Notes under the pieces: model-generated
The model's input: only the letters and a program-made list of their open reading frames with translations
Database searches by the model: none
Told to the model about the DNA's origin: nothing
Part shown: one piece after another, positions 590 to 57,700 of the stretch
Position numbering within the stretch: the stretch's first letter is position 1
How the letters are laid out: every line of letters begins with the position of its first letter
Assembly (NCBI GenBank): GCA_965649765.1
Contig: OZ287751.1
Location: 43,834,001 to 43,898,000, forward strand
Source: Bispira polyomma
Lineage: Eukaryota
DNA length: 64,000 nucleotides
Direction: 5' to 3'
Made by a program: the position numbers and the translations under genes

Positions 590-721
590 GAAATCTTCAT
601 TTTGCCAATGTTGAGGAGATAGACCATCTGCAGGGCAGGGATTATGTGTGCATTGTACAAAATGAAAAACTCCGAGGTCTTGTACAGGGTAATGACCAGA
701 GAGTTTACCCTCCGTCTCCAG
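590..721 (+). CDS. Ig2 C-terminal half, alternative exon A
   Basis: tacacag|GA...CCAG|gtagtg, 132 nt, phase 1-1. Encodes [44 protein letters not shown]. Not in the ORF track. Confidence 0.8.
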
Positions 722-3700
722 GTAGTGACCACACTCCCACACAGGAACCCATACAAACACCCAGATACACCACCACACACTCCACTAATCAGTCACCCTC
801 CTCAACCCATCACTCTTCATAGAGGAATTTCAGAATTTAACAGTCATAGGTCACATTTTCAAAAAAACAATTTCCAATAGTCGTGTGACATTGCGATATA
901 AACTGTTTAATTTTCAATGAATAAGGGATCTAAAATGCACCACTGTCTCCAAAATTCGCTAAAACTGGGCGAACAATGACTAGAATTTAGGTAAGTTCCA
1001 CAAAATAGTCACAACAATCTCAATTTCAGCAAATATTACCCAGAATTCTATCAAAAACACATTTTCTAAGTGGAAATTGTTTAGATTCCTTACTCTATAA
1101 CCTATTTCTTTTCTATTAAAGGCAACTGTGCACTGTGTATGTGGACTGAGACTGTAGATTCTGAAGTCCTTCTGTATCTGTCTCTTCTGTCTGTTATTAT
1201 AATACAAGGGAGCCACCTCTTACTCCTGTGTTTGATCTTGTAGTTTGTCTCTTGTGTATTACATGTGTGTGTGTGTGACAGTTGTCTGGAATTGGGAGTG
1301 TGACAATCATATATATATATACCTTCAGCTATTGTATATACTTGACATCAAAGGAAGCTAAAACACAACACACGATGATGAAGTCTCTGGCTAGAAAATG
1401 ACTCGAAATGGGACACGACTAATTGAAACAGTATTTGAAAAAAATAATCTGGCTGGTGTAAAATATACTACTTTTAAAGTCAAATTGCAACAAAATTTTC
1501 CTTGGAAATCTCATATGCGGTAGAACCTCTATTATTCAAAGTTTAGATTATCCAAATAATTGCTTTTGTGGACATATTTCCACTCTCTAAAATGTATATG
1601 TTCCTACTGTTTATACTAAAATGCTTCTTCTATTTTATGAACCTTCAATTATCCCAGCAAACTTCTGCTTCCCCATTATGTTCAGATAACAGAGTGTCTA
1701 CTGTATTTTGCAGGATGGTGACTTTCAGAAATGTGCTGAGTTTTAGGTTTCTATCTCTCTGTATGGTTGTAGTTGACATGTGACCGATTTGTATCTGGTT
1801 TTATAGCATAGCAGTTCCCATTTGTTCACTTACACAAAGGTTTGTGTTATGGTAGTTGAGTTAACTCCACTAAAAATCATTTGAGTCTAATCTAATAGTG
1901 TTCTGTTAGATTAGATAAGGAATACCTTGTAAGTGTGTGCCATTGTTTTAAAATCTTGTACTCTCTACTTTTTGCATGGAAATAATTTCTGTCAAGAAAA
2001 ACATATACCATATTCGACGTAATTAGCGCACAGTGCCCTTAGAAAAACAAATTACCCCTTTTAATGAGGTTTTTAAGTGTTTCCTTATAACCGCCCAGGC
2101 CTACAAAAAAAGCATATATGTCTCTTCACAGATGAAATGTCTGGAGACCCCATGTAGAAACACATCTGTGTCTGTGTTGAGGTGATCTTACTCATCTACA
2201 TACAAGTCTACAATGTCAAGTTACACTGTAAGACAAAAACAAATGTGCAAATAATGTCACTACAGGATAAAAATATTATATAATTATTCCCAAGCCAAAA
2301 AATAACTGATTTGGTTGAACACAGATAAATTAAAAAGTGAAGTTAATAAATCTGCAGCAATTGTTATTTAGTTTAAGGTTGATTCTTGGTTTTTAAAATA
2401 TATAGCATATCTTTTGCAGATGTGTTCACACTGGTAAATTTTACAATCTATCTGATAACAGAAAGCTCCACAATGAAGTATTACTATAAAAATTTGCTGT
2501 AAAACTGAAAGGTATTAAAAAATTATTTGGTAACTTTACTATCTTACTCTGTTATTGTCAGTATGGTAAGTTCTCTTAGTTTTTAAAAGCATGCCTATTT
2601 CAAACTTCTACAGCCTACAACAAGAAATAAAATGTGTACTTGGCAAATGAAACTTGAAGCAAAATTTTGATAATATACTCTAAATTTGTACTGGATTTTA
2701 ATGGCCATTTGCTGCAGTTAATGGCCATTTGCTGCAGTTGATGGCAGGACAGAAATAGTAACCTTGCTTGGGCTTGTATTTCACACCATTGATCAAAATA
2801 GTATATTTATTTTTTAAAATTTAACATTATTGTTTAAATAATATATTAGAGATTATATTCTAATTACATTAATCATGCTAAAGTAGCTTAACTCATTGGA
2901 AGTCATTATTTTGTCACCAATGGGTGTGGAGACTGATTTTCCTACATACAATAAAGCTAAGCCTTAAATATCTTTGAACAAGGCTACTTTATCAGTCAGT
3001 CACTTTCTTCCGTGTTCAAATTTATGACTAATTTCTAGCTTTGTAAACCTTTAGTACAGGAAGACTCCATCAGTTACTATCTTGTGATAGTTTACTTTCA
3101 CAGGCACTAAAAGTCTTGATTGCAGTTATTCATTTGTATTGGAAAATAACCCAAGTACTAACATAGAATTGTATATAGTATTTATTGCAGTTACTTGCAA
3201 AATATTTTTATTTCAAAAATAGCAGTAGAATTATTTTTTTCCTCTTTCAAATTCTCATTTGCATAGGTACATGCTGAAACTTAAGATAAGGCTGAAGTAA
3301 TATCTCAAATAGAGAACCATACCAAACATAAAATTAGGTGATGTGCGGTTAATGGGGCATGTGCGGTAATTACGTCGAATACGGTATATAAACTAAAGAC
3401 AGAAATTTGTTAGCAATAGACAGTCTTTACTATGCCTACATCTCAGTTGTATACAGTGTACATGTATAGTAAAATACGCTTTTTTGGCAGTTATAAACAG
3501 CCTTGTAGCAGAGTTTGTGTGACAAGTCCTGCTGGTCCAGTATGGCATACACTTTGGCATGGTTTGACAGAAACTAGCATTGGAAGATATTACAAGATTT
3601 TAAATGTCTAGAATTACACATATATCTGAAAAAATAACACTAGTTAAAACACCATCTGTTTGACCTTGAAATTATCTACGGGTCCACCATTTTACCCGAC

Positions 3701-6700
3701 CCCCAAGCTGACATTTTTATGCAGATGACACATGTTATCTTTCTGTGTTATCCTTTTGCTTTTGGGCTACTATTACAATATCCAGTGTGTCAAAGGTTAA
3801 TATACTGTAATTTTGTTATAATAATATATGTGTAGTTCTTAGAAATCACTGATATTAGTGGACGGTATAAAACCCTCAAAGTAAAGATTTTGTTTTGTAA
3901 AATAAGGAAGACCTTTATATGCAGACAATCTTGTATTGTTCACATCAAAGACACATTGCTAGGAATTCAGTTTTTGCAAGTGTATCATGATACCTTCAAA
4001 ACTGTGTCCCCCCCAAAAAAAATATAAATTCATGAATATTTGCCAATATTGCATGGTGTACAGGTTTTACATAACCACCATTTATATCAAGAAAAAACAA
4101 GGATGCTGGTATAAATTAGTGAAAATTAAAATTATATTGTCATCTTTTTGTGTCATACTCTTTTTAAATTAAAAAATATATGACATTTAAATCAATATAA
4201 ATTCAAAACAATGTTATTGTTGTCCTTCCAAAAGGAATCGTTCAAACTTTTGTGTCTTTTTTAATGTCATGTACAGTGTGTACATTTAATGTTGCCACAA
4301 AGCGGGGCCGCGGTGGCCTTGTGATTAGCAAGCATTGCGCTTCACAATCACTGGTCTCTCACCTCTGGGCGGCGTGAGTTCGAATCCCGTCGATGCCTAT
4401 GTGGGAAAGGTGGTAGTTCATTACTGTGGGCCGCTGGTTTCAGTGCTGAACCTTGACCGACTGTGTGCAGTGTTTCCTCCAGCGTTTCCAACTACCCGTC
4501 CCAATATAACCTACTAAAAGGTACTAGAGTGGACGTTAAATATCCAAATTCAAATTTAAATTGTCACAAAGCACATCTGGCTTCGACTAAAAGCATCCTT
4601 GGTTTTCTGTATGTGGAACATTTGTGTTGTATATGGTTTAAATGAATGACCTTTGTAGAACAACAGTGGGTTAAGGTACACACATATAACACTGATGGAT
4701 TCTATTTAGTCTACCCGGCGGTATGTCACAATGTTGTCCAGAGTTTCAGTTTAAATTTCACTAAAAGGTATTCGAAGTATGTAAATAAAAAAGCAAATGT
4801 GAACGGAAACGTTGGCCACAGTAACACTTTATACTAAAAGCTTTCACAGGTAAAATTGGCTAAATTAAAGACAGTGTTATTTAACTCTGTGTTAATTTGC
4901 ATCAAATTTAATGTATTAATTAGGTAGAAATTAAAAATATTTTACCACATATCAATCGCAATAAACCCGTACCAAAATCCACTGTCAAATGTTGTGATAT
5001 ACTGAATTCCCATGAATACACTAAAAATCAATTTAAAATTAGCTATAGTCAGAATATCAGTTTGATTTAAAAGCCATAAAATTAGTTTGTTTCAATGATT
5101 GTTTAGATTTGCATATCTGGTTATGAATAGTAACTGATCAAAACCGGTCAAGAACTTTGATTAGCCATTTACATAAGTCCTAACTGTCGTAATTTCAAGA
5201 GCCAAAAGCAAACAGTATCCAAACATTTAAGCATCATAATGCCGACAGTTTATGGTCTTCAACTGCAGTTTTCAAACATACTATACCTATATTGTGATGA
5301 TATGGTTGTCAACTTGCAATCATTCTTGTATTATGGTAATTCAGTCTGGTTGCAGTTATCCTTGAAATACATAGACATTCTGAATATATATCTATAATTA
5401 CTTAATATCATATAGTGTACTAATCACCCTCTTTAGATTGTTTACTTCCTGCGTGTGTATATTCTTGTTTGGTTGTATGTACTTCTTTGTAAATAATGCC
5501 TGTGTTTGTTGAAATGAATATAATGTCCTCAGCATACTGATATTTCCTGTTGATTCAGTGCTTACCTCAAGCTGGAGATTTGTTTCTGATAATTGTTCTT
5601 ATTGTCATACAGTAATCATACGTCTTTGTTTCAATCAAATCTGTTTCTTGATTCTCTTCTGCCATCTCTGTGTGTGACCCTTGTGATCGCTTCGACTCTG
5701 AATCCTCCTCTGTTGCGCGTACACAGGGAGTTTGCATTTTGCAAACATAGAAACTGGGGATGCCCTGGAGGAGCCTAACACGTATGTATGTATTGTGCAG
5801 AATACAGTATTGCGTGGGTTAGTTCAAGGGAATGACCAGAAAATTTACCCCAGGGGTACCTCCACTACAGGTATAGACAAGCTTATCATCACTCACATAA
5901 TGCAAGGCTTCTTTTTTCCTTAGTTGGAAAAATCTTTATCCGATGAGTCTTTTTACAATACTATGTATTTTCATAATTGCACCCTTATCAAGGCATGCAC
6001 AATTATGATTTCTGTTACTGTTTATGTTTGCCCTTAGTATTATGTCTTTTGTGTGTGTTCCTTAGGGGATTATTATGTCCATCCCGCTGGGGGGTTAACA
6101 TATTATTTTTCCTTTTTCCGCCGTCCGCCATCACACTTCGTTTCCGCTCATTTTAAGGACAAGTATTTTAGCTATCTTTACCAAATTTGGTATGCAGGAT
6201 TATGGGGTCAGTAGCTTGCTGGGTATTGCTTTTGGTTATTATAGCTATAAAGTTAATCGAGTAATAGCTAATTAGCTATTTTGAGTAGCTATTTCGTTTC
6301 CGTGCATTTAAAGGAAAAGTATTGCAGCTATCATCACCAAATTTGTTGTGGAGGTGTATCATATCAATAGCTTGTTTGGGATTGTATTTCAGCCCATTGA
6401 AAAAAAACAAGATGGCCGCCATGGCCGCCATCTTAAAAATGGTTTCCGCTCATTTAAAGGAAAAGTATTGCAGCTATCATCACCAAATTTGTTGTGGAGG
6501 TGTATCATATCAATAGCTTGGTTGGGATTGTATTTTGGCACATTCTGAAAAACAAGATGGCCACCATGGCCGCCATCTTGAAGATAGTTTCCGGACATTT
6601 AAAAGAAAAGTATTGCAGCTATCATCACCAAATTTGTTGTGGCGGTGTATCATGTCAATAGCTTGGTTAGAATTGTATTTGGGCCCATTCCAAAAAACAA

Positions 6701-9700
6701 GATGGCTGCCAAGGCCACTATCTTGAAAACGGTTTCCAGACATTTAAAGGAAAAGTATTGCAGCTATCATCACCAAATTTGTTGTGGAATTGTATCATGT
6801 CAATATCTTGGTTGGGATTGTATTTGGGCTCATTCCAAAAAATCAAGATGGCCGCCATCTTGAAAGCGGTTTGTGGACATTTAAAGGAAATTATTTTAGC
6901 TATCATCACCAAATTTGTTGTAGAAGTGTATCATGTCAATAGCTCGTTTGGGATTGTATTTGGGCCCATTACGAAAAACAAGATGGTTGCTACGGCCACC
7001 ATCTTGAAAATGGTTTCCGGACATTTAAAAGAAAACATACTGGTTAGATCATATAGCAATATGGATTGCCATTTGATTCAGGTAGTCCATAGGTTAGTTT
7101 CTAAAATAGAAGTAGCTAGAAACCTGTAAAACACGGGCCAATAGTCTTGTGGTCTATAGAACCGTTTGCGGTAAAATAACTATAAATCTGTACGAACATA
7201 TAATAAACTTAAAATTTGTTGCTGGACCCTATCCCTGATACCAATTCACAACCGCCTTTTTGGGGTCTATAACCCACTTGGTAGTTCAATTAGCTATCAA
7301 CATGAGTAATTCGCAAATATCACAGAAACCGTTACAGATAGAGCGATTTCGAGCAAATTTTTGGCCTTTTAGGTAAAAGAGACCTTACATCTAGTGCGTC
7401 TGAATAAACAAACAAAGTCTTTAAAGACTACTGTACAACTGTTAACAAAGTATTCATAGGGTAGACATTACACATGATAATGTGTTTTCTTCTATGCTAT
7501 CCTGTTTCTTTTCATATGTTGCAGCTTCTCTTAACAGGGCATCCTATTTCTAGTTAGGTATGCATGTCTATTTAGTCTTCATCCACAAATATGTACACAT
7601 AGGGGTATCTGTATTTAAAAGCACTAATTTACTTGTAGCAACTGAGTACTATATTATTGAGTACTTTGAAATCGTTCACTTAAATTGTTGTTTAAATTGA
7701 TGAAGATAACAGGATGTTTCCTCGTTTAGTTTAAAAACAAAAGTTGTTGAAACTCTGTGGTTTCTAAATTTTGACATCTCTGAAAAATTCTTCAAATGCC
7801 ATAAAGTTTGAACATATAAAACTGCTCAAAATGGTTCTGCAACCTTGCCCCAAAAATAGTTTAGATTTTAGATTCTGAGAAATAATCTCATACAAGCTAG
7901 AAGTGATAGAAATATTATATCTCAGAAAAGAATCCTAAGATTTCATTGGCTTAAAGATCGTCACATGACCTGTACTATTCCAGTGGAAAGTCCACATTCT
8001 TAAAAGTAGAGGGCACTCTATAAAAAAATGCCCCCATTTTGAGTAGGAACATGTCAAGTAGTAGGAAAGAATGGTCTTAAAATGGTACTTACTGGGAACA
8101 ATTCATTCATGGCATTGTCTTGAACAAAGATTCGACTGTTAAAGAACTATTGTTAGCACTCTTTATATACTCACCTATAAATCTTATGTAGGTAAAACTA
8201 TTTACATTTTCTGACAGCAAACTTGAGTGAAGCATATAAGCAGTACCTATTTAGAACAGTGTCCTTAAACTTTAGGTCTCAGATGTTTCAACTGTAAGGT
8301 ACATTTTTTCCTGAAATAAAATAGAATAAAATTTTTTTTCAGATGCAATGGTTTCACTGGCTTACTGTTTCACTTGCATGAAGTTCTGCAGTTTTATTTT
8401 TTATTTTGATCTTTATTTTTGTTTTCTCCTTTTGCTCCATGCATTTTTCTGAAAGTATTTCTGTCTTGTCTTTTGTGCTTATATAAATGTTTCATTCTTC
8501 TTTCCTTGTCAAAATATGGTGAGAAATGCTGCATTAAAGAAGTAAAGTATATGTAAACATGCCCAAACTCTTTGGTGTAAATTGCTGGTTCCTGGCAAAG
8601 CCACACAGTTTACAAAGAGACTGGGCCGACCATCCAGCAGAAAAGCTATGGTTTCTTTTTATGTTTGCTTATAATCCTCTATTGCTACAAAACAGCCTGG
8701 TTTGTCAGTTTCCTTTCTTGTGCATGAATTGTTTGATCGTTCAAATATTCAAAGTTTCTATTACCATAAGTAGTAACTGGTGTTACCCTTGACATTATTA
8801 TTGGTTTGCTTTAGAAATAAAAGTTCCTGGGAAACTGTCATGGTCTTTACAATTTAAGTAACTTTTTCTAAATAGTCAATAAAAAAATGTCCGACTTGTG
8901 GATATGTTTATCAATACAATTTTAATCTCTAAAAATTTAAGATTTTTCAAAACATCTTGCACGATTGAAGTAGAGTGATTTCGAGCTTTTTTTTTTTGAC
9001 CGAGCACCGTATAAAGAGAGTCGAATAGTTTTAAATTTTACAACTTTTATGAAAATGCAAGTGACATGTGGAGCCAATAGTGCCTGCGTTTGGACCCAAT
9101 AGGTTATGGAGAGCCGAATGGCAGAGTCAAAAGATACAAGTTTTAGTGGTCACCTAAATTTCTGCAATTTTCACAAAAAGGCAATAAATTTAGTGTATCA
9201 TTTTCTGCAATGATTTGGTTTAAAAAGCGATCTTTTCCTATTGGGATGCTTCGATTTTGTCGTGCAAAAAAACAATTTTCGAGTTTCATGTGAGGCTAGG
9301 TGGCCTTTGACATGTTGTACCCGCCATTTGCTTACTTGTGGTGCTTATGTGGTATATACATTCATGGAAAGTAAAATCTTGTTTTGTTTCTGCTTTTAAT
9401 AACCTGTTCCTAACACTATTCTTCCAAACATTAGTGTAATATGTTGCATGAAGTGTATATTTCTGTGTCAATCTCTTGTGAAAAAGGTGGTTTCCTGTTC
9501 CTAGAGTATTTGTGCAATATTTTTATATCTTCTATCTAACCAAAATAGAGCTTCTTGTCTATTTGTTCTGTATTCTCTTAATTCTATTCTCTATAGAAAG
9601 TATTACTGAAATATATTTATAGTTGTATTCATAGATTCACAGTTCTTTTTTGTAGTTAAAGAATAACAAAAACTGTTCAGAACAATGCATTAAAGCATTA

Positions 9701-12700
9701 AAAAAAATTATTATGCCGTGGTCACACTGAGTACGTTCGCGTTACGTTATTTTTTTGTAAACGGGAGAAAACAAAGTGAAAATCTGTGGGAAAATCGTGA
9801 AACGTAGCAAAAATCCATGTATATACGTTCAGTACGCACCTGTACATGTTTGTACACACATTTAATATGTTTTAATAGCCGTTTTAATTATGTTTAACTC
9901 GCTAGCCACGTTTTAATAATATGTTGGCATCATTAGCCACGTTTTAGAAATACGTTAGCTACGTTTCTAAACCTATTTTGTCTCGTTCTCCTCATCTTTA
10001 ATGTTTGTAAGCCTGTTTCGTTCTCCTCCTCGTTTTATGATATTATTTGTATGTATAGTTTGTTTTACTCCCGTCCTTTATGTCAAGTACGCATTAAATA
10101 CGTGTCATAGTTTTGCTGTGAACGCACTACCGGTTTGCGGAAAATTTTCAGCAAACGACTAAAGACGTAAAAAATTTCGAGCAGTCCAAAAGTTAAGACG
10201 TTTTTTTAAAAAGAGGCAATAACTAAACTTAAGGTACCATGTTTTAATTACGTTTACTACATTTTACTTATATTCGCCATTTTTTGTGCGTAATCGAAGC
10301 GTAAGGCCAGTGTGACCACGGCATTAGAGAGAATTATCAAGACTTAATGTTTTTCCAAACCTTAATGTCATATTACACAACATGTAGAATTCAAGCTTCT
10401 AGTTATTCATATTAATTGACCTTTTTGTCTGAATATTGCCCTCTAGTTTAAGTATATTAATAGTAAAGAAGTCCATTTAAATAAAGGTCAAATTTTAGCA
10501 TTCCGTTAAAACTCCACTGTCTTAATGTCTTTATTTCCTGAAATAATTTCTCTATCACTGTGGATTCAAACTTTTTGCCTGAACTTGTTGATAGGAAAAA
10601 TTACGCGAATTGAACCAGAGCTGAAGTGGAACTCAGAGTCCCCTACCATAGCAGTGACCACAACCACAAAGAAGATGAAGTGTATCTTTTCAGGAAAGTA
10701 AGATATTCATGTTCTCTTATGCTGGTGAAAAAGACATGAATATTCACATGAATATACGGTCTAGCACACTTATCTCAATCTGGAAATCTAGATTTTCTAC
10801 TTATCTGCTCAGTTGTACATTAGACACTAAAAACAAGGTGTTTATAGTGACATTAGAAGCCCTTAATTGTTGATTATATCAAGGTATTGTCCCCTAAGTA
10901 AATACATACACTGATAACACACCAGGACAGAAACTGCTAGATTTTCTGGTAAAGCTGTATTTCTAATTAGTGAAACACACATATTGTCTTCTTTATGTCA
11001 TCCTTATATTTAAGGCATATATCACTTTATAGATCACTTAGTCTGTATGAATAAAAAATGTCATACACTGCCACATCTAACATTTTGTTTTCCTGTTTTC
11101 ATTTCCTTGAAAAGCACCTTGGAAATGGAAATACACTAAGAATACAGTAGAACCTTCGAGACTTTGATTTTATGAACTCATTTCCACTCTCCTAAATTGA
11201 TGTTTTCTTGTTACAGTGATGTTTCTTCTGTTTTATGAACCTTCTTTTATATTACCAGTAGTTTACAGTGTTGAATCTTGACTAACTACATTGTAGTATA
11301 CACTGGTTTACTCCAGCACTAAAACTACTTATACAATGTGTGGAAAGCGACGTTGTATCCAAATCAAAAATTCCAAGTCCAACTCAATCATTTTAGAAAT
11401 GCTCACAATACGCAGATTAGCAATAGTGACTTCGGCTCACTGGATTTTCAGATCTCTTACCATCTTGAGCCATATGAATGTCTGCTATTGTATGCTAGTG
11501 TATCAAAACAAATAAAAAATTTAACCAATTCTGAGTATTCTCTAAATCATTGCTCATTATTTTTTTCAGTCCCACTCCAAGAATACACTGGACAATGGAG
11601 AATGGTGACCCATTACCCAGTAAGGTGAAAGTCTCCAAAACTGGACATGAAATTGAGATCCCTAACATTGACTATGATGATGAAGCTGGCTATAGGTGTG
11701 CAGCAGAAAACTCCAGATCTGATCCAAAGTCTACTTGGGTCTTCAAAGTGCTGCAGCTCAGGGTGCAATGTGAGTGTCTTCTCTATACTAGTAATACGCC
11801 ACACTTCATATAGTTCACTGTGTCTGGTATTGATTGAAAGCTTGGCCTCTAGAAACCTAGAAGGCCTATTCTAACATTATTCTCTCATGTTAGGTGAGAT
11901 TTACGAATATTGTATAGTATTCTATTATGTATTTTTAAAACACTTTAGTGATGCGAAACATCTTCTAAAGCATCTTTTAACGCATTTTTTTTCACAAACT
12001 TCCATTACAATTTTCCATTTCAGCTATTGTGGTCTACAGCACATCATGTCATATTTACGTGTTAATGACATCCTATTCACAATAAACCTATTATTAGCAG
12101 GAGTTGAACTGGGGACCTAATGATTACCAGACCAACTCCTGAACTGCTAGGCCATGGGAGACCATATGGTCTTTAGAGACAACACTTTTTAGGTGGGGGA
12201 TACCACTGTTTATGTCCGAATGAGTGGTAATTCCCTTGGTCTACTGCACACAGTTTGTATTGTGTATTGGCTATTCTTAATTGGGTGGTAATTCCCTTGA
12301 TGTGTTTAACACAGTTTGTGTTGTGTTTTATCTTTTCTTAATTGGGTGGTAATTCCCTTGATGTATTTAACACAGTTTGTATTGTGTTTTAGCTATGCCT
12401 GATTGGGTGATAATTCCCTTGGTCTACTTAACACAGTTTGTATTGTGTTTCAGCTATGCCTGATTGGGTGGTAATTCTCCGATGTATTTAACACAGTTTG
12501 TGTTGTGTTTTAGCTATGCCTAATTGGGTGATAATTCCCTTAATGTACTTAACACAGTTTGTATTCTGTTTAAGCTATGCCTGATTGGGTGGTAATTTCC
12601 TTGATGTACTTAACACAGTTTGTATTCTGTTTAAGCTATGCCTGATTGGGTGGTAAAACCTGAATCCGTAGACACTTCTGAGGAAGAAAGTGCTGAGTTC

Positions 12701-15700
12701 CATTGTGAGGCTGGAGGAATTCCCCGCCCAGAAATCTCTTGGTCCATCAATGGCGTGAGTACATAACGTACATATACTAACATTCGGCTCTGTATTAACT
12801 TGGATTTCGGTATCTACCTGAAATCTGTCTATTCAATTAATATAATAGAAGTTAGCATTAAAATGAGTAATGCTTAATTTTATGTAATTTCTGTAAAATT
12901 GTTTCAAAAAAGCCCTAGTTATTTTACTGGGGCAGGTGACAGCACTCTCAGTACTTTCCCTTGCTTTTTTGTGTGCTATCTTTTGGTTGAAAACGGCAGA
13001 AGCACTCAGGTTTACAAAAGGTAAAATGATACATCTCCCATGTATACCACATACCCCAAAATAATTTTTCTATGCTGATGACTAATGCAGTGCAGATGAC
13101 TATATCAGTTGCTGGAGAACAACTGTGTCAGAGGATGCTTTGTCAGTAATTGCTTTAGAAGTGTGTGAAGTAAACAAGAATGGTCAAAATTTTTATCATT
13201 TTTAACAAGAAAAAGCATGGATGGTGGTGAAGGCATATGTTAGCTTTGGACAGCAGTTAATTTGTTGTTGTTGTACATATCATAGGAACCTATTGAGAAT
13301 CAACCCAATGCCCGCAGAGAAATATTGAAGGGGGGTCAACTGATTAAATATACTCAAGTGACCAAGACAGATGCGGCTGTACTTCAGTGTAATGCCAGCA
13401 ACAGTCATGGATATATCTTCTACAATGCCTATCTCAATGTCATAGGTTTGTAGTAACAATGTGATGTAGAAGTAAAGTCTGAATGTGCATACATTGTTTG
13501 GTAAAGGGGGGGGGATGGACTGTTTTACTGGATTTGCATTATTCACCAAAGTACAAGCATGAGGACTTTTATTTCTATCATAAAGATTGTCTATTATGGT
13601 ATTTTCTTAAATTGTATTGTTATGACAACCCCTAAAACTTTGTTTTGAGGCTATTTGGTCATGTTCCGCCATCTTAGCATCCTTTATTCTACTAGACAAT
13701 GGACGGTAGAACTTGCGCACTGTCAGGATTTCCGTTCAATGCACACTTTTAGTCTCCATAGCAACTGATAAATCTATATCTCAGAACAGGCTGGTGACTG
13801 TATAACTAGTCATCAAAAAAACACTGATAATGTTATATATCTCAGAAAACATTAATAACTGTATAACTGTGAATAATATAACTTTGTGTCTGAGAAAACA
13901 TTGATAGCTCTCTGGTATTACAGTGTTACAATTTATAGTTTTATGTTAACTTGTAACTGAGCCCCCCACATTCATCAGTAACCATCCACTCTCTGTTATT
14001 ACAGTCTATAGTTTTATTTCCACTTGTAGCTGAGCCCCCCACATTCATCAGTAAGACTTCACTCTCTTATTACAGTCAATAGTTTTATTTCTACTTGTAC
14101 CTGACCATACCCCTAGTCATGAGTAAGCCTTCACTCTCTGTTATTACAGTCAATAGTTTTGTTTCTACTTGTACCTGATCATACCCCTGGTCATCAGTAA
14201 GCCTCCAATCAGTAAGCCTTCATACTCTGTTATTACAGTCAATAGTTTTGTTTCCACTTGTACCTGACCATACCCCTGGTCATCAGTAAGCCTTCACTCT
14301 CTGTTATTACAGTCAATAGTTTTGTTTCCACTTGTAGCTGAGCCCCCCACGTTCATCAGTAAGCCTCCACTCTCTGTTATTACAGTCTATAGTTTTGTTT
14401 CCACTTGTAGCTGAGCCCCCCACGTTCATCAGTAAGCCTCCACTCTCTGTTATTACAGTCTATAGTTTTGTTTCCACTTGTAGCTGAGCCCCCCACATTC
14501 ATCAGTAAGCCGCAGTCAGTAGTTAAGGTGGCAGAGGGCCAGGACACCACCATAGCCTGTGAGGTGTATGGGGCACCCAAACCAGTAGTGACGTGGAAGA
14601 AAGATGAGGAGGATGTGGAGGGACCCAGGTTCTCTATCAGCACATCGGGAAAGATTGTAGGAAATCTGACCATTCAGGTATTGTGGTAGATGTTTAAAGT
14701 TTGATGTAAATTATTACAACTACTAGTGACAAACTTGAAAAGTACTCAGTAGAGTCCATATCTCCACAAAGATTGTAGAAAAGTTAACTATTCAAGTATT
14801 TGTGGTAGATATTTGTAGTTTGTGGTAAATCGTAAACTACTTGGGGCAAACTTGAAGGGCTGTGCATACTTCCGCCAAGGAGCCTCAGTGCCAAATATTC
14901 ATGGATCTGCCATTCTCCCCAGACGGATACTTATGAATTTTCCCTTGGCCCAATTTGCCCCATCCTTCTAATAAATGTCATGTAAATTAGTTCTCTAGTT
15001 TTAATGTAACAAAGAAACTAACCAACGGTTATGGATGAAAACATACCGAGAGACATAATATATGTAATCTGACTTTAGTTTTAACAATAAAGTTTTTACC
15101 TTATATCTGTCACTGTATCCACCAGAGGAGTAACTCTGGTGGATACTAAGGATTAGTCGTCGTTACGTATTGGATTGTAACTGTATACTCTTTAAAAACT
15201 AGAATATGTTCTTAGTGTAAATGGTGACCCTGTTATATCAGGGCTCAATTTCTTCTAGACATTCCACTAGATTTAGCATTGGAAGACACTTGAATCTGCT
15301 AGTTATGGCAAAAGGTTTTTTAATGGACTTTAGGTGCGAGAAATTTGTACTAATTTTATACATGAATGCCGTATGCATCTTTCTGTTTATCTTTATAAAA
15401 AAATTGCGGTGTATTTTTAAACAGAGGGCTGTAAAAGCAGATGAAGGAATCTACGAGTGTTTTGCAAAAAACAAATTTGGAGAAATAGATGCCAATGGCC
15501 AGCTCATAGTCAGAGGTAATATACGAAACATTGAATAGAATGTAAAAATAAATATGTGAAATGGGAAAAAAACCCTCTAAAGATATATGTCTTGTTGTGT
15601 ACTCCTAAAGATGTACATATTACATCAAAATTTATACTTGGGCCTTTTTTGTGGTCTTTTATGTTAATCTAACATGCTGATCATGTTTATGTGTTTATGT

Positions 15701-18700
15701 TGGTATTTGTATTCATTCCCACTCCAGGTCACTTAAGTGCCTACTAGCTCCTCTGTTGACAAGTACTGGACTTTGGCTACATACTTGCACTTGTAGTGAA
15801 AGTAATAAGTTTGTAAATATTGGCCAATAGATGTGGATCATGACCTACAAGTGAACAACGTGGACATAACACATAAGACTACCATTGAATGTTTGTCATT
15901 CCTCACTCCATGTTTTAGCGTCCATAACCCACATTATTCTATATATAACACATACTCTATAACCCACAGAGAAGACGGAGATCATTGTTTTCCCCAAGTC
16001 CCAAGAGGTCCAAGCTGGAGAGAAGGTGGTGCTGGAATGTGAAGCCCAGACAGACACTAATGAGTTCAACAAACTGGTGATCTACTGGAAGAGAAATGGA
16101 GAGCGCATTGACTTTGATTCTCCAGATACCTCGTCTACGCTCAGTTTTGATACCAGAGATAACTCACTAACCATCTCAGGTAAGTGGTGTAACATTCACA
16201 CTAGATACCAGGGATAACTCACTGACCATCTCAGGTAAGTGGTGTACCATTCACACTAGATACCAGAGATAACTCACTGACCATCTCAGGTAAGTGGTGT
16301 AACATTTACACTGGATACAAGAGATAACTCACTGACTATCTCAGGTAAGTGGTGTACCATTCACACTAGATACCAGAGATAACTCACTGACCATCTCAGG
16401 TAAGTGGTGTAATATTCACACTAGATACCAGAGATTACTCACTGACCATCTCAGGTAAGTGGACACTAGTTACCAAAGATAACTCACTAACCATCTCAGG
16501 TAAGTGGTGTAACATTTACACTGGGTACCAGGGATAACTCACTAACCATTTCGGGTAAGTGGTGTAACATTTACACTGGGTACCAGAGATAACTCACTGA
16601 CTATCTCAGGTAAGGGGTGTAACATTTACACTGGATAAAAGAGATAACTCACTGACTATCTCAGGTAAGTATTCACACTGGATACCAAAGATAACTCACT
16701 GACCATCTCAGGTAAGTGGTGTAACATTCACACTAGATACCAGAGATAACTCACTGACCATCTCAGGTAAGTGGTGTAATATTCACACTAGATACCAAAG
16801 ATTACTCACTGACCATCTCAGGTAAGTGGTGTACCATTCACACTAGATACCAGAGATAACTCACTAACCATCTCAGGTAAGTGGTGTAACATTTACACTG
16901 GGTACCAGGGATAACTCACTAACCATTTCGGGTAAGTGGTGTAACATTTACACTGGGTACCAGAGATAACTCACTGACCATCTCAGGTAAGGGGTGTAAC
17001 ATTTACACTGGATAAAAGAGATAACTCACCGACTATCTCAGGTAAGTATTCACACTGGATATCAAAGATAACTCACTGACCATCTCAGGTAAGTGGTGTA
17101 ACATTCACACTAGATACCAGAGATAACTCACTGACCATCTCAGGTAAGTGATGTACCATTCACATTAGATACCAGAGATAACTCACTGACCATCTCAGGT
17201 AAGTGGTGTAACATTCACACTAGATACCAGAGATAACTCACTGACCATCTCAGGTAAGTGGTGTAACATTTACACTAGATACCAGAGATAACTCACTCAC
17301 CATCTTAGGTAAGTGGTCTGGCCTGTTTTTATCTACAGCAATGTGCCTATACACATTTAATGTACTGTTATCCATAAAGTCTTCCATCATCAAGTCATGT
17401 ACACGTTAAAATGTTTGGTCTTTATATATATCATTCAGTTGTTTCCATGCATCTGTATACGTCATGCATATCTGTGAAACATCCAGGGTGGATATGGATG
17501 GTGAAAATTGAAACAAATATTTACTTCTGTGTGATATACGTTAGAGTATATGGGGTGTATTACAGTAATTAATACTGCCAGTAATACTGTGAAATCACTA
17601 TTTGATCTATCTTCAGTTTTTAATGTTTTCAGCAGTTATGCACAAATTGGAGCTCTGTCTAAGAATACTTAGTATATATACACTGTCCAGACAGCTCTCC
17701 TGTCATGGCTATTACTTGTGTTTTATTGAGACATTCACTTGTATTTTATTCCAGGTAACATATACCTCTTTTGTAGGTGCAGCAGTTGATGACACAGCCA
17801 GCTATACTTGTGTAGCATCTAATGGACTAGACCAGGATGAGTTCACTGCAGAAATAGTCGTCAAAGGTGAGTGAGGTTCAATTACATTCTGACAATCTGC
17901 ATGTCTATCCTGCAGGTCTAAGTTTTTTATTGGATTCAAAATCTTAATGTTGTGCACCCCTGGCCCATGTATGTGCAGTATCTACTTATGAGAACCATGT
18001 GTCTGAAATACCCACTTGTCAGAACCATGTTTCTCAAGTACCTACTTATCCGAACCATGTAATACTATCTGAAGTACCCACTTATAAAAACCATGTATCT
18101 GAAGTACCCACTTATGAAAACCATGTGTCTGAAGTACCCACTTATGAGAACTATGTATCTGAAGTACCCACTTATGAGAACTATGTATCTGAAGTACCCT
18201 CTTATGAGAACTATGTATCTGAAGTACCCACTTATGAGAACCATGTATCTGAAATACCCACTTATGAGAACCATGTATCTGAAGTACCCACTTATGAGAA
18301 CTATGTATCTAAAGTACCCACTTATAAGAACCATGTATCTGAAATACCTACTTATATGAACCATGTATCTGAAGTACCCACTTATAAGAACCATGTATCT
18401 GAAGTACCCACTAATGAGAACCATGTATCTGAAGTACCCACTTATCAGAACTATGTATCTGAAGTACCCATTTATGAGAACCATGTATCTAAAGTACCCA
18501 CTTTAGTAACCATATATCTGAAGTACCCACTTATCAGAACCATGTATCTATCTGAAATAGCCACTTATTAGAACCATGTATCTGAAGTACACACCTATAA
18601 AAACCATGTATCTTAAGCACCCTCTTATGAGAACCATGTATCTGGAGTACCCTTTCATAAGAACCATGTATCTGAAATACCCACTTATAAGAGCCATGTA

Positions 18701-54700: not shown

Positions 54701-57700
54701 ATTAGTTATAACATTAGTACTTTTGCTTTATATTTTAATGGATACACGTTGTGAACTTCTGGATATTTAGAGCACAAGGAACCAAAATGTAGTAGCCACT
54801 TATTTGTAATTTACCAAATACAGAAAAGTATGGGTCTGAATCAAGAGAAAATTAATTATCATAAATCAATTTCTTGTGGTAACAAAAAACACACTAAGTT
54901 TGGGTCTAAGTCTTAACTTAAAGTCTTAATTTTGGTGTTTAATTTTGGCCGAAAAGTTGAAGATTTTGGTCTTAGTCCCAGTGACAATAAGAAAATATCT
55001 TTATTTAGTGTTAACTTGCTCTTAATATTAAGACTAACAGCAGGCAGTCTTGAATATTTTAGACATAAAAGGCTTTCACAGACCTTATTAGGTGACAAAC
55101 GTCAGATATGTGCGTATAGTACAACTTCTATTGTATAAATATATAATTATTTATGAACTCTCCAAAATTTATGTTTTCTATTGTTTTACACTAAAATAGC
55201 TGTTCTATTTGATAAACCTTCTATGATCCTAGCTAAATCTTGCTCTTCCAACATGTTTGGACAATAGAGTTTCTAGATCTGTTTCTCCTTACATTTCTGT
55301 CATTGTATATGTTGTTACAGTGATGAGCCACGTAGCTATGCTGCCCCTCCTAAAAACCTGCCACCAAATAACATAGACGATGAGCAGCCACTAGGGGGCA
55401 GTGAGTCCGACAGTATGGCAGAGTATGAGGACACAGACCCAACTAAGTTCAATGAGGACGGATCCTTTATAGGTAAGTGTATAGTGAGTGATAATAGGTG
55501 TATATAAACACACAGACCCCACTAAGTTCAATGAGGACGGATCTTTTATAGGTAAGTGTGTACTGGGTGATAATAGGTGTATATAAACACACAGACCCCA
55601 CTAAGTTTAATGAGAGCCGATCCTTTATAGGTAATTAAGTGTGTATAGTGAGTGATAATAGGTGTATATAAACACACAAACCCCACTAAGTTTAATGAGA
55701 GCTGATCCTTTATAGGTAAGTGTGTATAGTGAGTGATAATAAACACAGAGACCCCACTAAGTTTAATGAGGACTGATCCTTTATAAGTAAGTGTATACTG
55801 GGTGATAATATATAGGTGTGTACAAACACACAGACCCCACAAAGTTCAATGAGGACGGATCCTTTATAGGTAAGTGTATACTGGGTGATAATAGGTGTAT
55901 ATAAGCACACAGACCCCACTAAGTTTAATGAGGATGGATCTTTTATAGGTAAGAACATGTGTATAATTGGTGATAATAGGTGTATATAAACACACAGACC
56001 CCACTAAGTTTAATGAGGACGGATCTTTTATAGGTAAGTGTGTATAGTGAGTGATAATAGGTGTATATAAACACACAGACCCCACTAAGTTTAATGAGGA
56101 TGGATCCTTTATAGGTAAGTGTGTATAGTAGTGATAATATGTATATATAAACACACAGACCACACTAAGTTTAATAAGGACAGCTCCTTTATAGGTAAGT
56201 GTGTATAGTGAGTGATAATAGGTGCATATAAACACACAGACCCCACTAAGTTTAATAAGGACAGCTCCTTTATAGGTAAGTGTCTATAGCGAGTGATAAT
56301 AGGTGTATATAAACACACAGACCCCACTAAGTTCAATGAGGACTGCTCCTTTATAGGTAAGTGTGTATAGTGAGTGATAATAGGTGTATATAAACACACA
56401 GACCCCACCAAGTTTAATGAAGAAGCGCCTTTATAAGTAAGTGTATACTGGGTGATAATAGGTGTATATAAGCACACAGACCCACTAAGTTTAATAAGGA
56501 AGAATCCTTTATAGGTAAGTGTATACTGGGTGATAATAGGTGTACATAAACACACAGACCCCACTAATTTCAATGATGACAAATCCTTTATAGGTAAGTG
56601 TGATTATAGGTAAGCTGACCGTTTCCACCCCTATAAGTTGGCGGCTAGCAGCCCACTACATTTCTTACTCCCAGAGCCTATGTCTGTCGGAAAGCAGTCA
56701 ACACCCCTCAACCTATGCCCCATCTCTCCAATACATTCAGTAGATTTCGCGTCATCCTGTTGACAAACAAAGAAATAAGCCAACCAAACAAAGTATATAA
56801 ATTAGAAAATTTTATAAACTCTATAAAAACCTATATAATTCTTTTTATAAACTCTGTAAAAACCTATATAATTCTTTATAAAATAATAATGTTTAGAATA
56901 TTTTGTCACCATGTGTAAATGTTGTCTGTGTACATCCTAAAATATTGAAATTATGTAACAACAGTTGTTGTGGTACAAAGGTGTTATAGTTCTATAGTAT
57001 TGAGAGAAAAGTATATACGTCATGTGTAGAATGTGTATCTCTATGGAAATAATAACAACAGGAACTCCTTGAGGCAGATAATAAATATATAACATTTAGA
57101 TGTACATGTATATATATGTTACAGGCCAAATTAAAATCCAGTCAGATTTTAAATCCACCTAGGCGAGATTAAAAGTCTAATCTCGCCTAGGCGGAATTAA
57201 AATTTCAAGGTTTGTCTAATAGAATTTATTCTTGCCTAGGCGGATTTAAAATCTGCTTAGACCAAACTAAAATGTTGATTTTGTCTAGGCGAGATTAAAA
57301 TAAGGGGAATTAAAATGTCACATTGAGGCAAATTTTTATTATTTCATTCATGTATGCAGTAAAAGTATGGATAACAACCTTAAAATTTAACCTATTTTAT
57401 TTCTTTATAAAGAACTTTCCATTCATGGTTCAAAACATTAATTCATTCATGGAATATAGTAATTGCATTAATTATTAACATCATTTCTTTATAAAGCACT
57501 TTCATTCATGGTTTAAAACATTAATTCAGACACTACCAAGTGCTACCAAATCATTCCTGAGCACATATAAAAAAAAAAAGTGCACCAGGAAAGTCTTGAA
57601 GGATTACCAGTATGGAATTTTTGAAAATGCATACTCACACAGTGTAACTAATGTTTGTATTTATAGGACTGTATGGAGGCAAGAGAGATTCAACCATTCA

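What the first reader, a model, noticed from the sequence alone, without database searches (positions are those of the whole stretch)
590..5870. Duplicated, probably mutually exclusive Ig2 half-exons: Dscam-like specificity switch in an L1/neuroglian gene
Seen: two exons 5 kb apart both follow TACACAG|G, are phase 1-1, and encode the same half-domain (G.LHFAN.E..D.L....[19 protein letters not shown]). About 28 of 44 residues are identical by hand alignment. Both frames are intact and the flanking introns show no visible similarity, suggesting an old, selected duplication. I found no Ig N-half exon between them, so including both would give two second-cysteine strands for one domain. Established: Ig2 is central to homophilic binding in L1-family horseshoe structures, and arthropod Dscam1 varies specificity by mutually exclusive half-Ig exons. 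Inference: this gene makes alternative Ig2 surfaces, and more variants may lie upstream of base 1. I know of no such arrangement in L1-family genes but cannot search.
Basis: partly seen in the sequence, partly recalled or inferred. Interest (0 to 1): 0.88.

Follow-up and report, generated by a model that had tools for sequence, protein, structure and literature searches.

The report
Alternative Ig2 half-exons in L1-CAM gene
A worm-like invertebrate's L1/neuroglian-type nerve-cell adhesion gene carries two old, well-preserved copies of the exon for the second half of its Ig2 domain. Each mRNA most likely uses only one of them. Related animals show the same doubling, but no RNA data were available to prove the either-or use.

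Summary
Exons at 590-721 and 5727-5870 both follow TACACAG|G, are phase 1-1, and encode the same Ig2 C-terminal half (63-66% identical; E 4e-10 against the 1-Gb genome).

The gene is an L1-family CAM:
- Ig1 to Ig6 half-exons lie in order.
- The cytoplasmic exon matches Bravo_FIGEY.
- Neurofascin is the closest solved structure, judged through a homologue.

There is one Ig2 N-half exon, 4.2 kb upstream of the window. There is no third copy.

Both exons are under purifying selection. Synonymous sites between them are saturated. A second species keeps the same order, and each exon is closest to its own counterpart (80%; dN/dS 0.26 and 0.16).

49 of 80 animal contigs from metagenomes carry two or three such tandem exons, in several L1 paralogues. 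Every spliced homologue seen has exactly one.

The best reading is therefore a conserved pair of alternative, probably mutually exclusive, exons. They change the E-F loop, the F-G turn and the Ig2-Ig3 linker, but not strands E, F and G.

Three points remain open or unsupported:
- Either-or use could not be tested, because no RNA run exists for this organism.
- The "Dscam-like" claim is not supported: there are two variants, and no extra upstream variants were found.
- No exclusivity mechanism was found.

No description of this arrangement turned up in the papers searched.

The parts
590..721 (+). Exon A: the first copy of the Ig2 C-terminal half-exon (strand E, E-F loop, strand F with the second Cys, F-G turn, strand G, short linker). 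132 nt, phase 1-1.
   Evidence: The orthologue in L022 at 10061-10180 is 80% identical, with dN/dS about 0.26.
5727..5870 (+). Exon B: the second copy of the Ig2 C-terminal half-exon. 144 nt, phase 1-1. It has one more residue in the E-F loop and three more in the Ig2-Ig3 linker.
   Evidence: The orthologue in L022 at 15443-15577 is 80% identical, with dN/dS about 0.16.
10595..10697 (+). The next constitutive exon (Ig3 N-terminal half). Its acceptor is in phase 1, so it fits the donor of either A or B.
   Evidence: The orthologous exon in L022 is at 18146-18259.
5438..5726 (+). About 290 nt of intron directly upstream of exon B that is conserved with the second species. It includes a roughly 45-nt GU-rich core. 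It is a candidate splicing-regulatory region.
   Evidence: blastn of window against L022 gives 68% over 473 nt including the exon; alignment. Constitutive exons and exon A show no comparable intron conservation.
1798..1910 (+). Conserved element inside the A-to-B intron, at a syntenic position in the second species. It is not coding, because stops appear in the frame that phase 1 would impose.
   Evidence: 72% over 114 nt; reading of the aligned sequences.
4969..5008 (+). Short conserved block in the A-to-B intron.
   Evidence: 80% over 40 nt; weak.
55382..55477 (+). Cytoplasmic exon segment of the same gene that matches the L1-family intracellular region. It places the gene in the L1 family.
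   Evidence: Pfam PF13882 Bravo_FIGEY, 39.5 bits against a cut-off of 23.8.

Best explanation
The window holds most of an L1/neuroglian-family cell-adhesion gene.

Its Ig2 domain is encoded by one N-half exon, 4.2-4.4 kb upstream of the window at G000:C4:43829571-43829756. Two tandem, homologous C-half exons follow: A (590-721) and B (5727-5870).

The exon was duplicated long ago. Both copies have been kept as protein-coding sequence.

Each mRNA most likely joins the N-half exon to either A or B and then to the Ig3 exon at 10595. This gives two receptor isoforms.

The isoforms share strands E, F and G and the disulphide Cys. They differ in three places:
- the E-F loop;
- the first two residues of the F-G turn (Glu-Lys in A, Thr-Val in B);
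- the length and sequence of the Ig2-Ig3 linker at the bend of the horseshoe.

Shown: the anatomy, the selection on both copies, conservation of the pair in another species, and the wide occurrence of such pairs.

Inferred: either-or use; regulation through the conserved intron upstream of B together with weak acceptors; and an effect on binding or on horseshoe geometry.
For: 1. Both exons fit the same upstream donor and downstream acceptor in phase 1. No other Ig exon lies between them.

2. A against B: the proportion of synonymous differences is 0.83 (saturated) and of non-synonymous differences 0.26. In the stretch covering strands F and G it is 0.15. Fisher p = 5e-8.

3. L022, a 1.2-Mb contig from another assembly, has the order Ig1C, Ig2N, A-like, B-like, Ig3N.
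- A is 80% identical to its counterpart and 63% to the other copy. B is 80% and 65%.
- dN/dS is 0.165/0.64 for A and 0.15/0.91 for B (p = 0.003 and 2e-5).
- All splice sites are intact.
- Type-specific residues are kept within each type.

4. The tree groups A with its orthologues (SH-aLRT 90) and B with its orthologues (87).

5. Of 80 metagenome-derived animal contigs, 46 have two and 3 have three tandem Ig2 C-half exons, 490-1745 nt apart. 129 of 132 copies have phase-1 AG and GT.

6. Every spliced transcript or gene model of relatives has exactly one Ig2 C-half: P0101, P0128, P0151-P0154, P0104, P0108, P0124, P0138, P0072 and the cDNA-like contig L085.

7. Only exon B has a long conserved upstream intron. 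This is typical of regulated exons.

8. Each copy keeps the Cys, the invariant Asp and the core residues needed to pair with the single N-half.
Against: - There is no RNA evidence at all. No RNA run is on record for this organism, and no spliced fragment of a close relative was found.
- Nothing in the sequence enforces exclusivity. Both exons are multiples of three, so double inclusion or double skipping stays in frame. The intron between them is 5,005 nt, which rules out steric hindrance. The splice sites are ordinary GT-AG.
- No conserved complementary intronic pair was found.
- The Owenia and Helobdella genes examined have a single copy, so the arrangement is not universal in annelids.
Confidence: 0.72

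Rival explanations
1. The two exons are alternative but not strictly exclusive. One, probably B, is the default. The other is a regulated substitute, and some transcripts include both or neither.
For: Both exons are multiples of three, and no exclusivity mechanism was detectable. B lies nearer to the common 'last copy' type of other species, while A sits on a longer branch.
Against: Double inclusion or double skipping would leave Ig2 with two second halves or none. No such form was seen in any homologous transcript. Both copies are strongly constrained as proper half-domains.
Confidence: 0.15
2. One copy is a relic that is no longer used, and the gene is effectively single-isoform.
For: No RNA data exist. 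The acceptors are weak and purine-rich, especially that of A.
Against: Synonymous sites between the copies are saturated, yet 63-66% of residues, the frame, both splice sites and the Cys are kept. Each copy has dN/dS well below 1 against its orthologue at dS 0.6-0.9. The same pair is kept in L022, and pairs are kept in dozens of other contigs.
Confidence: 0.06
3. Both exons are always included together, giving an extended Ig2 region.
For: The frame is preserved if both are included.
Against: There is only one N-half exon and one first Cys to pair with. All spliced homologues carry one C-half. Loci with three copies would make this still less plausible.
Confidence: 0.04
4. Exon A belongs to another transcription unit, such as a separate upstream paralogue or an alternative transcript.
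For: None was found.
Against: The order is Ig1N, Ig1C, Ig2N, A, B, Ig3N on one strand with matching phases. There is no second Ig2N or other Ig exon nearby. The order is identical in L022. The other Ig2-like exons of the genome lie megabases away or on other contigs and are only 42-58% identical.
Confidence: 0.03

Closest known systems
FGFR1-3 exons IIIb/IIIc (vertebrates); from my own knowledge
   Same: Two tandem homologous exons encode the C-terminal half of one Ig domain of a cell-surface receptor. One is used per mRNA, which gives two binding variants.
   Different: The gene family is different (a receptor tyrosine kinase) and so is the domain (Ig3). For FGFR, the tissue-specific regulation (ESRP, PTB, Rbfox) and the switch in ligand specificity have been shown experimentally. 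Here neither RNA nor binding data exist.
Arthropod Dscam1 exon 4 and exon 6 clusters
   Same: Tandemly duplicated half-Ig exons sit in the horseshoe (Ig1-4) region of a neuronal IgSF adhesion molecule (PMC3406286, PMC1397879).
   Different: Dscam1 has 12 and 48 variants, which encode the N-terminal halves of Ig2 and Ig3. It shows isoform-specific homophilic binding, and the exon 6 cluster is chosen through docking-site/selector RNA pairing. Here there are two variants (2-3 in related contigs) of the C-terminal half, and no conserved complementary pairs were found.
Vertebrate L1 family splicing: neurofascin, NrCAM, L1CAM
   Same: Same gene family and the same region of the protein. Neurofascin 155 carries an 18-residue splice insert in the Ig2-Ig3 connection (PMC9633819). 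Exon B likewise lengthens that linker relative to A.
   Different: Vertebrates use cassette inserts. Chataigner et al. state that the isoform splice differences lie outside Ig1-Ig2 (PMC9633819). Here half of the Ig2 fold itself is exchanged.
Other tandem either-or exon pairs noted in this same genome by earlier agents of this scan (ABCD3, calcium-channel subunit, myosin)
   Same: They have the same genomic signature: a homologous tandem exon pair with matching phases, also kept in a second worm.
   Different: They are in unrelated genes. Those notes are unchecked AI notes and are not evidence for this locus.

Membership tests
L1 family of IgSF CAMs (L1CAM, CHL1, NrCAM, neurofascin, neuroglian) | Six N-terminal Ig domains, the first four forming a horseshoe | tested here: met
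   Half-exons for Ig1 to Ig6 lie in order on the + strand. Ig1 and Ig2N are upstream of the window; the rest run from 590 to 17871. Pfam I-set/Ig_3 matches the Ig3, Ig5 and Ig6 exons. The horseshoe fold itself was modelled only for a homologue, P0101.
L1 family of IgSF CAMs (L1CAM, CHL1, NrCAM, neurofascin, neuroglian) | Fibronectin type III repeats between the Ig domains and the membrane | tested here: inconclusive
   Open frames at 19036-23278 look like FN3 pieces by eye. Single-exon pieces gave no Pfam match at E <= 0.01. The full-length homologues do carry PF00041.
L1 family of IgSF CAMs (L1CAM, CHL1, NrCAM, neurofascin, neuroglian) | Single transmembrane helix and a cytoplasmic tail with the ankyrin-binding FIGQY region | tested here: met
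   The transmembrane exon lies within 49150-49677. PF13882 Bravo_FIGEY scores 39.5 bits (cut-off 23.8) on window:55277-55504. The exon ends within the motif, at ...SFIG, so the final residues were not read.
L1 family of IgSF CAMs (L1CAM, CHL1, NrCAM, neurofascin, neuroglian) | Closest characterised relatives are L1-family proteins | tested here: met
   This was judged through the homologue P0101, which matches exons A and B at E 3.5e-6. Its best solved structure is neurofascin (E 1.7e-61). Its named relatives are L1 and CHL1.
Mutually exclusive exon (MXE) pair | Tandem homologous exons of similar length with identical phases, each compatible with both flanking exons | tested here: met
Mutually exclusive exon (MXE) pair | Both copies maintained by purifying selection and conserved across species | tested here: met
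   Pairs are also present in 49 of 80 related contigs.
Mutually exclusive exon (MXE) pair | Exactly one copy per mature mRNA | not testable with these tools
   No RNA run is on record for this organism, and no spliced fragments of close relatives were found. Indirect support only: all homologous transcripts carry one copy.
Mutually exclusive exon (MXE) pair | A recognisable mechanism enforcing exclusivity: a short intron (steric hindrance), U2/U12 incompatibility, a frame shift with NMD, or competing RNA structures | tested here: not met
   The intron is 5,005 nt. Both exons are multiples of three. The splice sites are ordinary GT-AG. No conserved complementary intronic pairs above chance were found. 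With only two species to compare, the RNA-structure test is weak.
Dscam1-type hypervariable exon array | Arrays of many (ten or more) alternative exons | tested here: not met
   There are exactly two copies in 104 kb and in the whole genome. Related contigs have at most three.
Dscam1-type hypervariable exon array | The variable exons encode the N-terminal half of Ig2/Ig3, which carries the isoform-specific homophilic interface | tested here: not met
   Here the C-terminal half is exchanged. Binding specificity cannot be tested with these tools.

The most novel reading that the evidence does not exclude
The Ig2 C-half exon cluster is an ancient and recurrently expanded feature of annelid, perhaps wider spiralian, L1-type genes.
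- Upstream-type and last-type exons predate the split of several L1 paralogues.
- The two or three variants are chosen by cell type.
- They give L1 molecules different trans-binding partners or different horseshoe geometry.

This would be a small combinatorial adhesion code in a family that has been thought to vary only by short cassette inserts.
Probability: 0.3. Interest if true: 0.75.

Novelty: new member of a known kind. Interest (0 to 1): 0.58.

Why it matters
L1-family molecules guide axons and build junctions. Their Ig1-4 horseshoe, and Ig2 in particular, mediates homophilic and heterophilic binding.

In vertebrates and flies, the known splice variation of this family leaves the Ig2 fold untouched. 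A conserved either-or exchange of half of Ig2 would show that some animals diversify L1 recognition by the same trick as FGFR and Dscam.

It would also supply a natural pair of isoforms for asking which Ig2 loops, and which features of the Ig2-Ig3 hinge, set binding specificity.

There is a practical point as well: gene models in these genomes will silently drop one exon.

Tried and rejected
- **RNA evidence.** The run search found only three DNA-type holders and no RNA. Laying them (5,801 letters) only confirmed the assembly.
- **Spliced protein fragments of close relatives.** Searches seeded on the Ig2 N-half exon of the window gene and of L025 returned only genomic open frames that read into the intron. 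The 150 best representatives of the exon profile were almost all genomic exon frames too.
- **Pairing a transcript with a tandem genomic locus.** The genomic contig L110 that matches transcript P0072 has a single copy, so it says nothing. P0086/L114 is too short.
- **Docking/selector RNA pairing.** Duplex energy between conserved intron blocks was no better than shuffles (z = +1.1 and -0.1). The longest helices conserved in both species were 7-10 bp, mostly G-U or exon-exon, which is chance level.
- **More variants.** None were found in 40 kb upstream, in the window or in the genome.
- **PDB search with the 47-residue exon profile.** No hit. I used a homologue instead.
- **Literature.** Seven searches found no L1-family mutually exclusive exons. 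The WGS prefixes of some contigs were not found in any paper.
- **Single or independent origin.** This is unresolved. The best tree puts A and B together, but one clade of all upstream copies is not rejected (AU p = 0.33).
- Natural homologous transcripts were used for structure and PDB mapping.
Full report
**Observation**

Exon A is 590-721 and exon B is 5727-5870. Each follows TACACAG and precedes GT.

Read from the third base, they translate without stops. Their first two bases complete a Gly codon begun by the last G of the upstream exon. Their last G begins a Gly codon completed by GA at 10595, the start of the Ig3 N-half exon.

They align with 27 invariant columns out of 43. In a six-frame search of the whole 1.035-Gb assembly they find each other at 66% identity and E 4e-10. 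The next best loci are on other parts of the genome, at 42-58%.

Nucleotide similarity between the two regions stops at the exon edges. DNA contigs of three public runs cover both exons with no differences. That only shows that the assembly is sound.

**What the gene is**

Open frames on the + strand give, in order:
- Ig1 N and C halves and an Ig2 N half, all upstream of the window. The Ig2 N-half exon is at G000:C4:43829571-43829756, which is 4,244-4,429 nt before window base 1.
- A and B, then half-exons for Ig3 to Ig6.
- FN3-like exons.
- A 3,895-codon Ser/Thr-rich open frame.
- A transmembrane exon and a cytoplasmic exon.

The cytoplasmic exon matches Pfam Bravo_FIGEY above its curated cut-off. 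The Ig3, Ig5 and Ig6 exons match I-set/Ig_3.

A full-length homologue found with the exon profile (P0101) has neurofascin as its closest solved structure (E 1.7e-61). Its named relatives are L1 and CHL1. The gene is therefore an L1/neuroglian-family member.

Earlier notes of this scan call the genome an annelid; I did not verify this. It fits that the only named invertebrate relatives I met were the annelids Owenia and Helobdella.

**One N-half, two C-halves, nothing else**

I ran tblastn and a profile built from 160 homologous exons over 104 kb (40 kb upstream plus the window). They find exactly two C-half exons and exactly one Ig2 N-half exon. The remaining matches are noise.

A profile search of the whole genome adds only distant single exons of other IgSF genes. 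The possible refutations 'separate paralogue' and 'whole-domain duplication' both fail.

**Both copies are functional**

Between A and B, 83% of synonymous sites differ, which is saturation. Only 26% of non-synonymous sites differ, and 15% in the stretch covering strands F and G (Fisher p = 5e-8). A copy left to drift for that long would not keep its frame, splice sites, Cys and two thirds of its residues.

A 1.2-Mb contig from another assembly (L022) gives independent evidence. It has the same order: Ig1C, Ig2N, A-like, B-like, Ig3N. A is 80% identical to its counterpart and 63% to the other type. B is 80% and 65%.

Against these orthologues:

| Exon | dN | dS | Fisher p |
|---|---|---|---|
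| A | 0.165 | 0.64 | 0.003 |
| B | 0.15 | 0.91 | 2e-5 |

For comparison, dS is 1.3-1.4 and dN 0.08-0.17 in the constitutive Ig1C and Ig2N exons.

Acceptors and phase-1 donors are intact in L022 and in three further short contigs carrying A-like or B-like exons. A tree groups A-types together (SH-aLRT 90) and B-types together (87).

Residues that tell A from B are kept within each type:
- Val/Ile at position 7;
- Glu versus Thr/Leu at position 9;
- Asp versus Thr/Ser before the Tyr;
- Glu-Lys versus Thr-Val after the Asn;
- Arg after the Pro in B.

**The arrangement is widespread**

A pattern scan of JGI metagenome records returned 80 animal-derived contigs. A six-frame profile search finds two tandem C-half exons in 46 of them and three in 3. 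The copies are 490-1745 nt apart.

129 of 132 copies have an AG two bases before the first codon and a phase-1 GT before any stop.

Several distinct gene families are involved, and contigs of different families come from the same metagenome. They are therefore paralogues within one host.

On a tree, the upstream copies of these families cluster together and the last copies cluster together: three label changes against 21.6 in shuffles. In those animals the exon duplication therefore predates the gene duplications.

The window's A and B sit together on the best tree. A single clade of all upstream copies including A is not rejected, however (AU p = 0.33). With 41 columns, the question of one origin or several stays open.

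The Owenia and Helobdella genes I fetched have one copy, as does L110. From memory only, many of these JGI records are host reads in gutless-oligochaete symbiont metagenomes. I could not check this.

**Either-or use is inferred, not shown**

No RNA run exists for this organism in the index. Protein searches seeded on the Ig2 N-half exons found only genomic frames.

The available support is indirect:
- Every spliced transcript or gene model of a relative has exactly one C-half between Ig2N and Ig3N. This covers P0101, P0128, P0151-P0154, P0104, P0108, P0124, P0138, P0072 and the cDNA-like contig L085.
- Each copy keeps the Cys, the invariant Asp that pairs with the Arg of the N-half (the R-D bridge of the 'NOG motif', PMC8529090), and the core residues. 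Each is therefore built to complete the one N-half.
- Tandem homologous exons with these properties are, from general knowledge, almost always mutually exclusive.

Against a strict reading, nothing in the sequence enforces exclusivity:
- Both exons are multiples of three.
- The intron between them is 5,005 nt.
- The sites are GT-AG.
- I found no conserved complementary intron pairs.

Regulation is hinted at by weak, purine-rich acceptors in both species. It is also hinted at by about 290 nt of conserved intron just upstream of B, plus a conserved block at 1798-1910. The constitutive exons and A lack such flanks.

**What changes in the protein**

Instead I modelled Ig1-4 of the natural homologue P0101 (mean pLDDT 89, pTM 0.77) and transferred positions by alignment.

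| Element | Exon residues | A versus B |
|---|---|---|
| Strand E | 2-4 | identical |
| E-F loop with a short helical turn | 5-17 | differs at eight positions; B is one residue longer |
| Strand F, with the Cys | 18-24 | identical |
| F-G turn | 25-28 | first two residues differ (Glu-Lys in A, Thr-Val in B) |
| Strand G | 29-38 | identical, except Arg-Val (A) versus Lys-Ile (B) at its end |
| Ig2-Ig3 linker | 39 onward | differs; B is three residues longer |

In the PDB alignment, the neurofascin segment holding Thr222 and Gln224 falls on the segment of strand G that is identical in A and B. That segment is the centre of the Ig2-Ig2 supramolecular beta-sheet of the homodimer (PMC3406286).

The F-G loop of Ig2 is required for axonin-1-mediated aggregation (PMC3406286). 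The Ig2-Ig3 connection makes the 180-degree turn of the horseshoe, and it is where neurofascin 155 carries an 18-residue splice insert (PMC9633819).

The likeliest effect is therefore a change of a peripheral binding loop and of the hinge, not of the core dimer strand. This step is inference.

**Comparison and novelty**

The closest known analogue in principle is FGFR IIIb/IIIc: two exons for the C-terminal half of an Ig domain, one per mRNA (my own knowledge).

Dscam1 resembles it in exchanging half-Ig exons within a horseshoe. It differs in number of variants, in which half is exchanged, and in its known selection mechanism.

Within the L1 family, the papers I could search describe cassette inserts and alternative tails. 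One states that neurofascin isoform differences lie outside Ig1-Ig2 (PMC9633819). Seven searches found no tandem Ig2 exons in this family. That is not proof of absence, because most subscription journals are not held.

I class it as a new member of a known kind. It is of moderate to good interest. The comparative case is strong, and the one experiment that matters is cheap.

Noticed in passing
window 12224-12656, 13935-14511, 16149-17317, 20030-20230, 25240-25543: Minisatellites whose unit is an exon-intron junction of the neighbouring exon of this same gene.
- The acceptor plus start of the Ig4 N-half exon is repeated about 7 times, and that of the Ig5 N-half exon about 8 times.
- The end plus donor of the Ig6 N-half exon is repeated about 22 times.
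- Two further arrays lie at FN3-region junctions.

This matches the 'mirage' junction repeats that earlier notes report for this genome.
   Followed up: partly
window 33252-44936 (+): A single open frame of 3,895 codons, 29% Ser+Thr, with internal repeats. It lies between the FN3 exons and the transmembrane exon and ends in a stop.

It might be a giant mucin-like alternative exon or an alternative 3' end of the L1 gene; compare the mucin-like domain of neurofascin 186. It might also be a separate gene.
   Followed up: no
window 17965-19045: A 30-nt unit repeated about 36 times, open in two or three frames, lies in the intron between the Ig6 C-half exon and the first FN3 exon. There are also a 66-nt array of 21 copies at 31274-32657 and a 145-nt array at 6296-7035.
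   Followed up: no
window 4300-4560 and 51920-52110; also about 400-590 nt upstream of window base 1: Copies of a tRNA-like SINE. Summed contig depth over 4180-4567 runs into the millions in the DNA runs, so this is a very abundant repeat. Positions 1852-3403 also show very high depth.
   Followed up: no
window 5855/5856 inside exon B: A second GT in phase 1 (GG|GTACC) could serve as an alternative donor. It would shorten the linker encoded by B by five residues. It is not conserved in L022, so it is probably not used.
   Followed up: partly
L030, L031, L032 (metagenome contigs): Three tandem Ig2 C-half exons. The first two are close copies of the upstream type and carry Asn-X-Thr sequons in the E-F loop, which the last type lacks. 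In those animals the variants may therefore differ in glycosylation.
   Followed up: partly
L057 (42-kb metagenome contig) 9137-9259 and 10001-10123: A tandem pair whose upstream copy groups with the last-type copies on the tree rather than with the other upstream copies. This suggests a separate, independent duplication of the same exon in another lineage.
   Followed up: no
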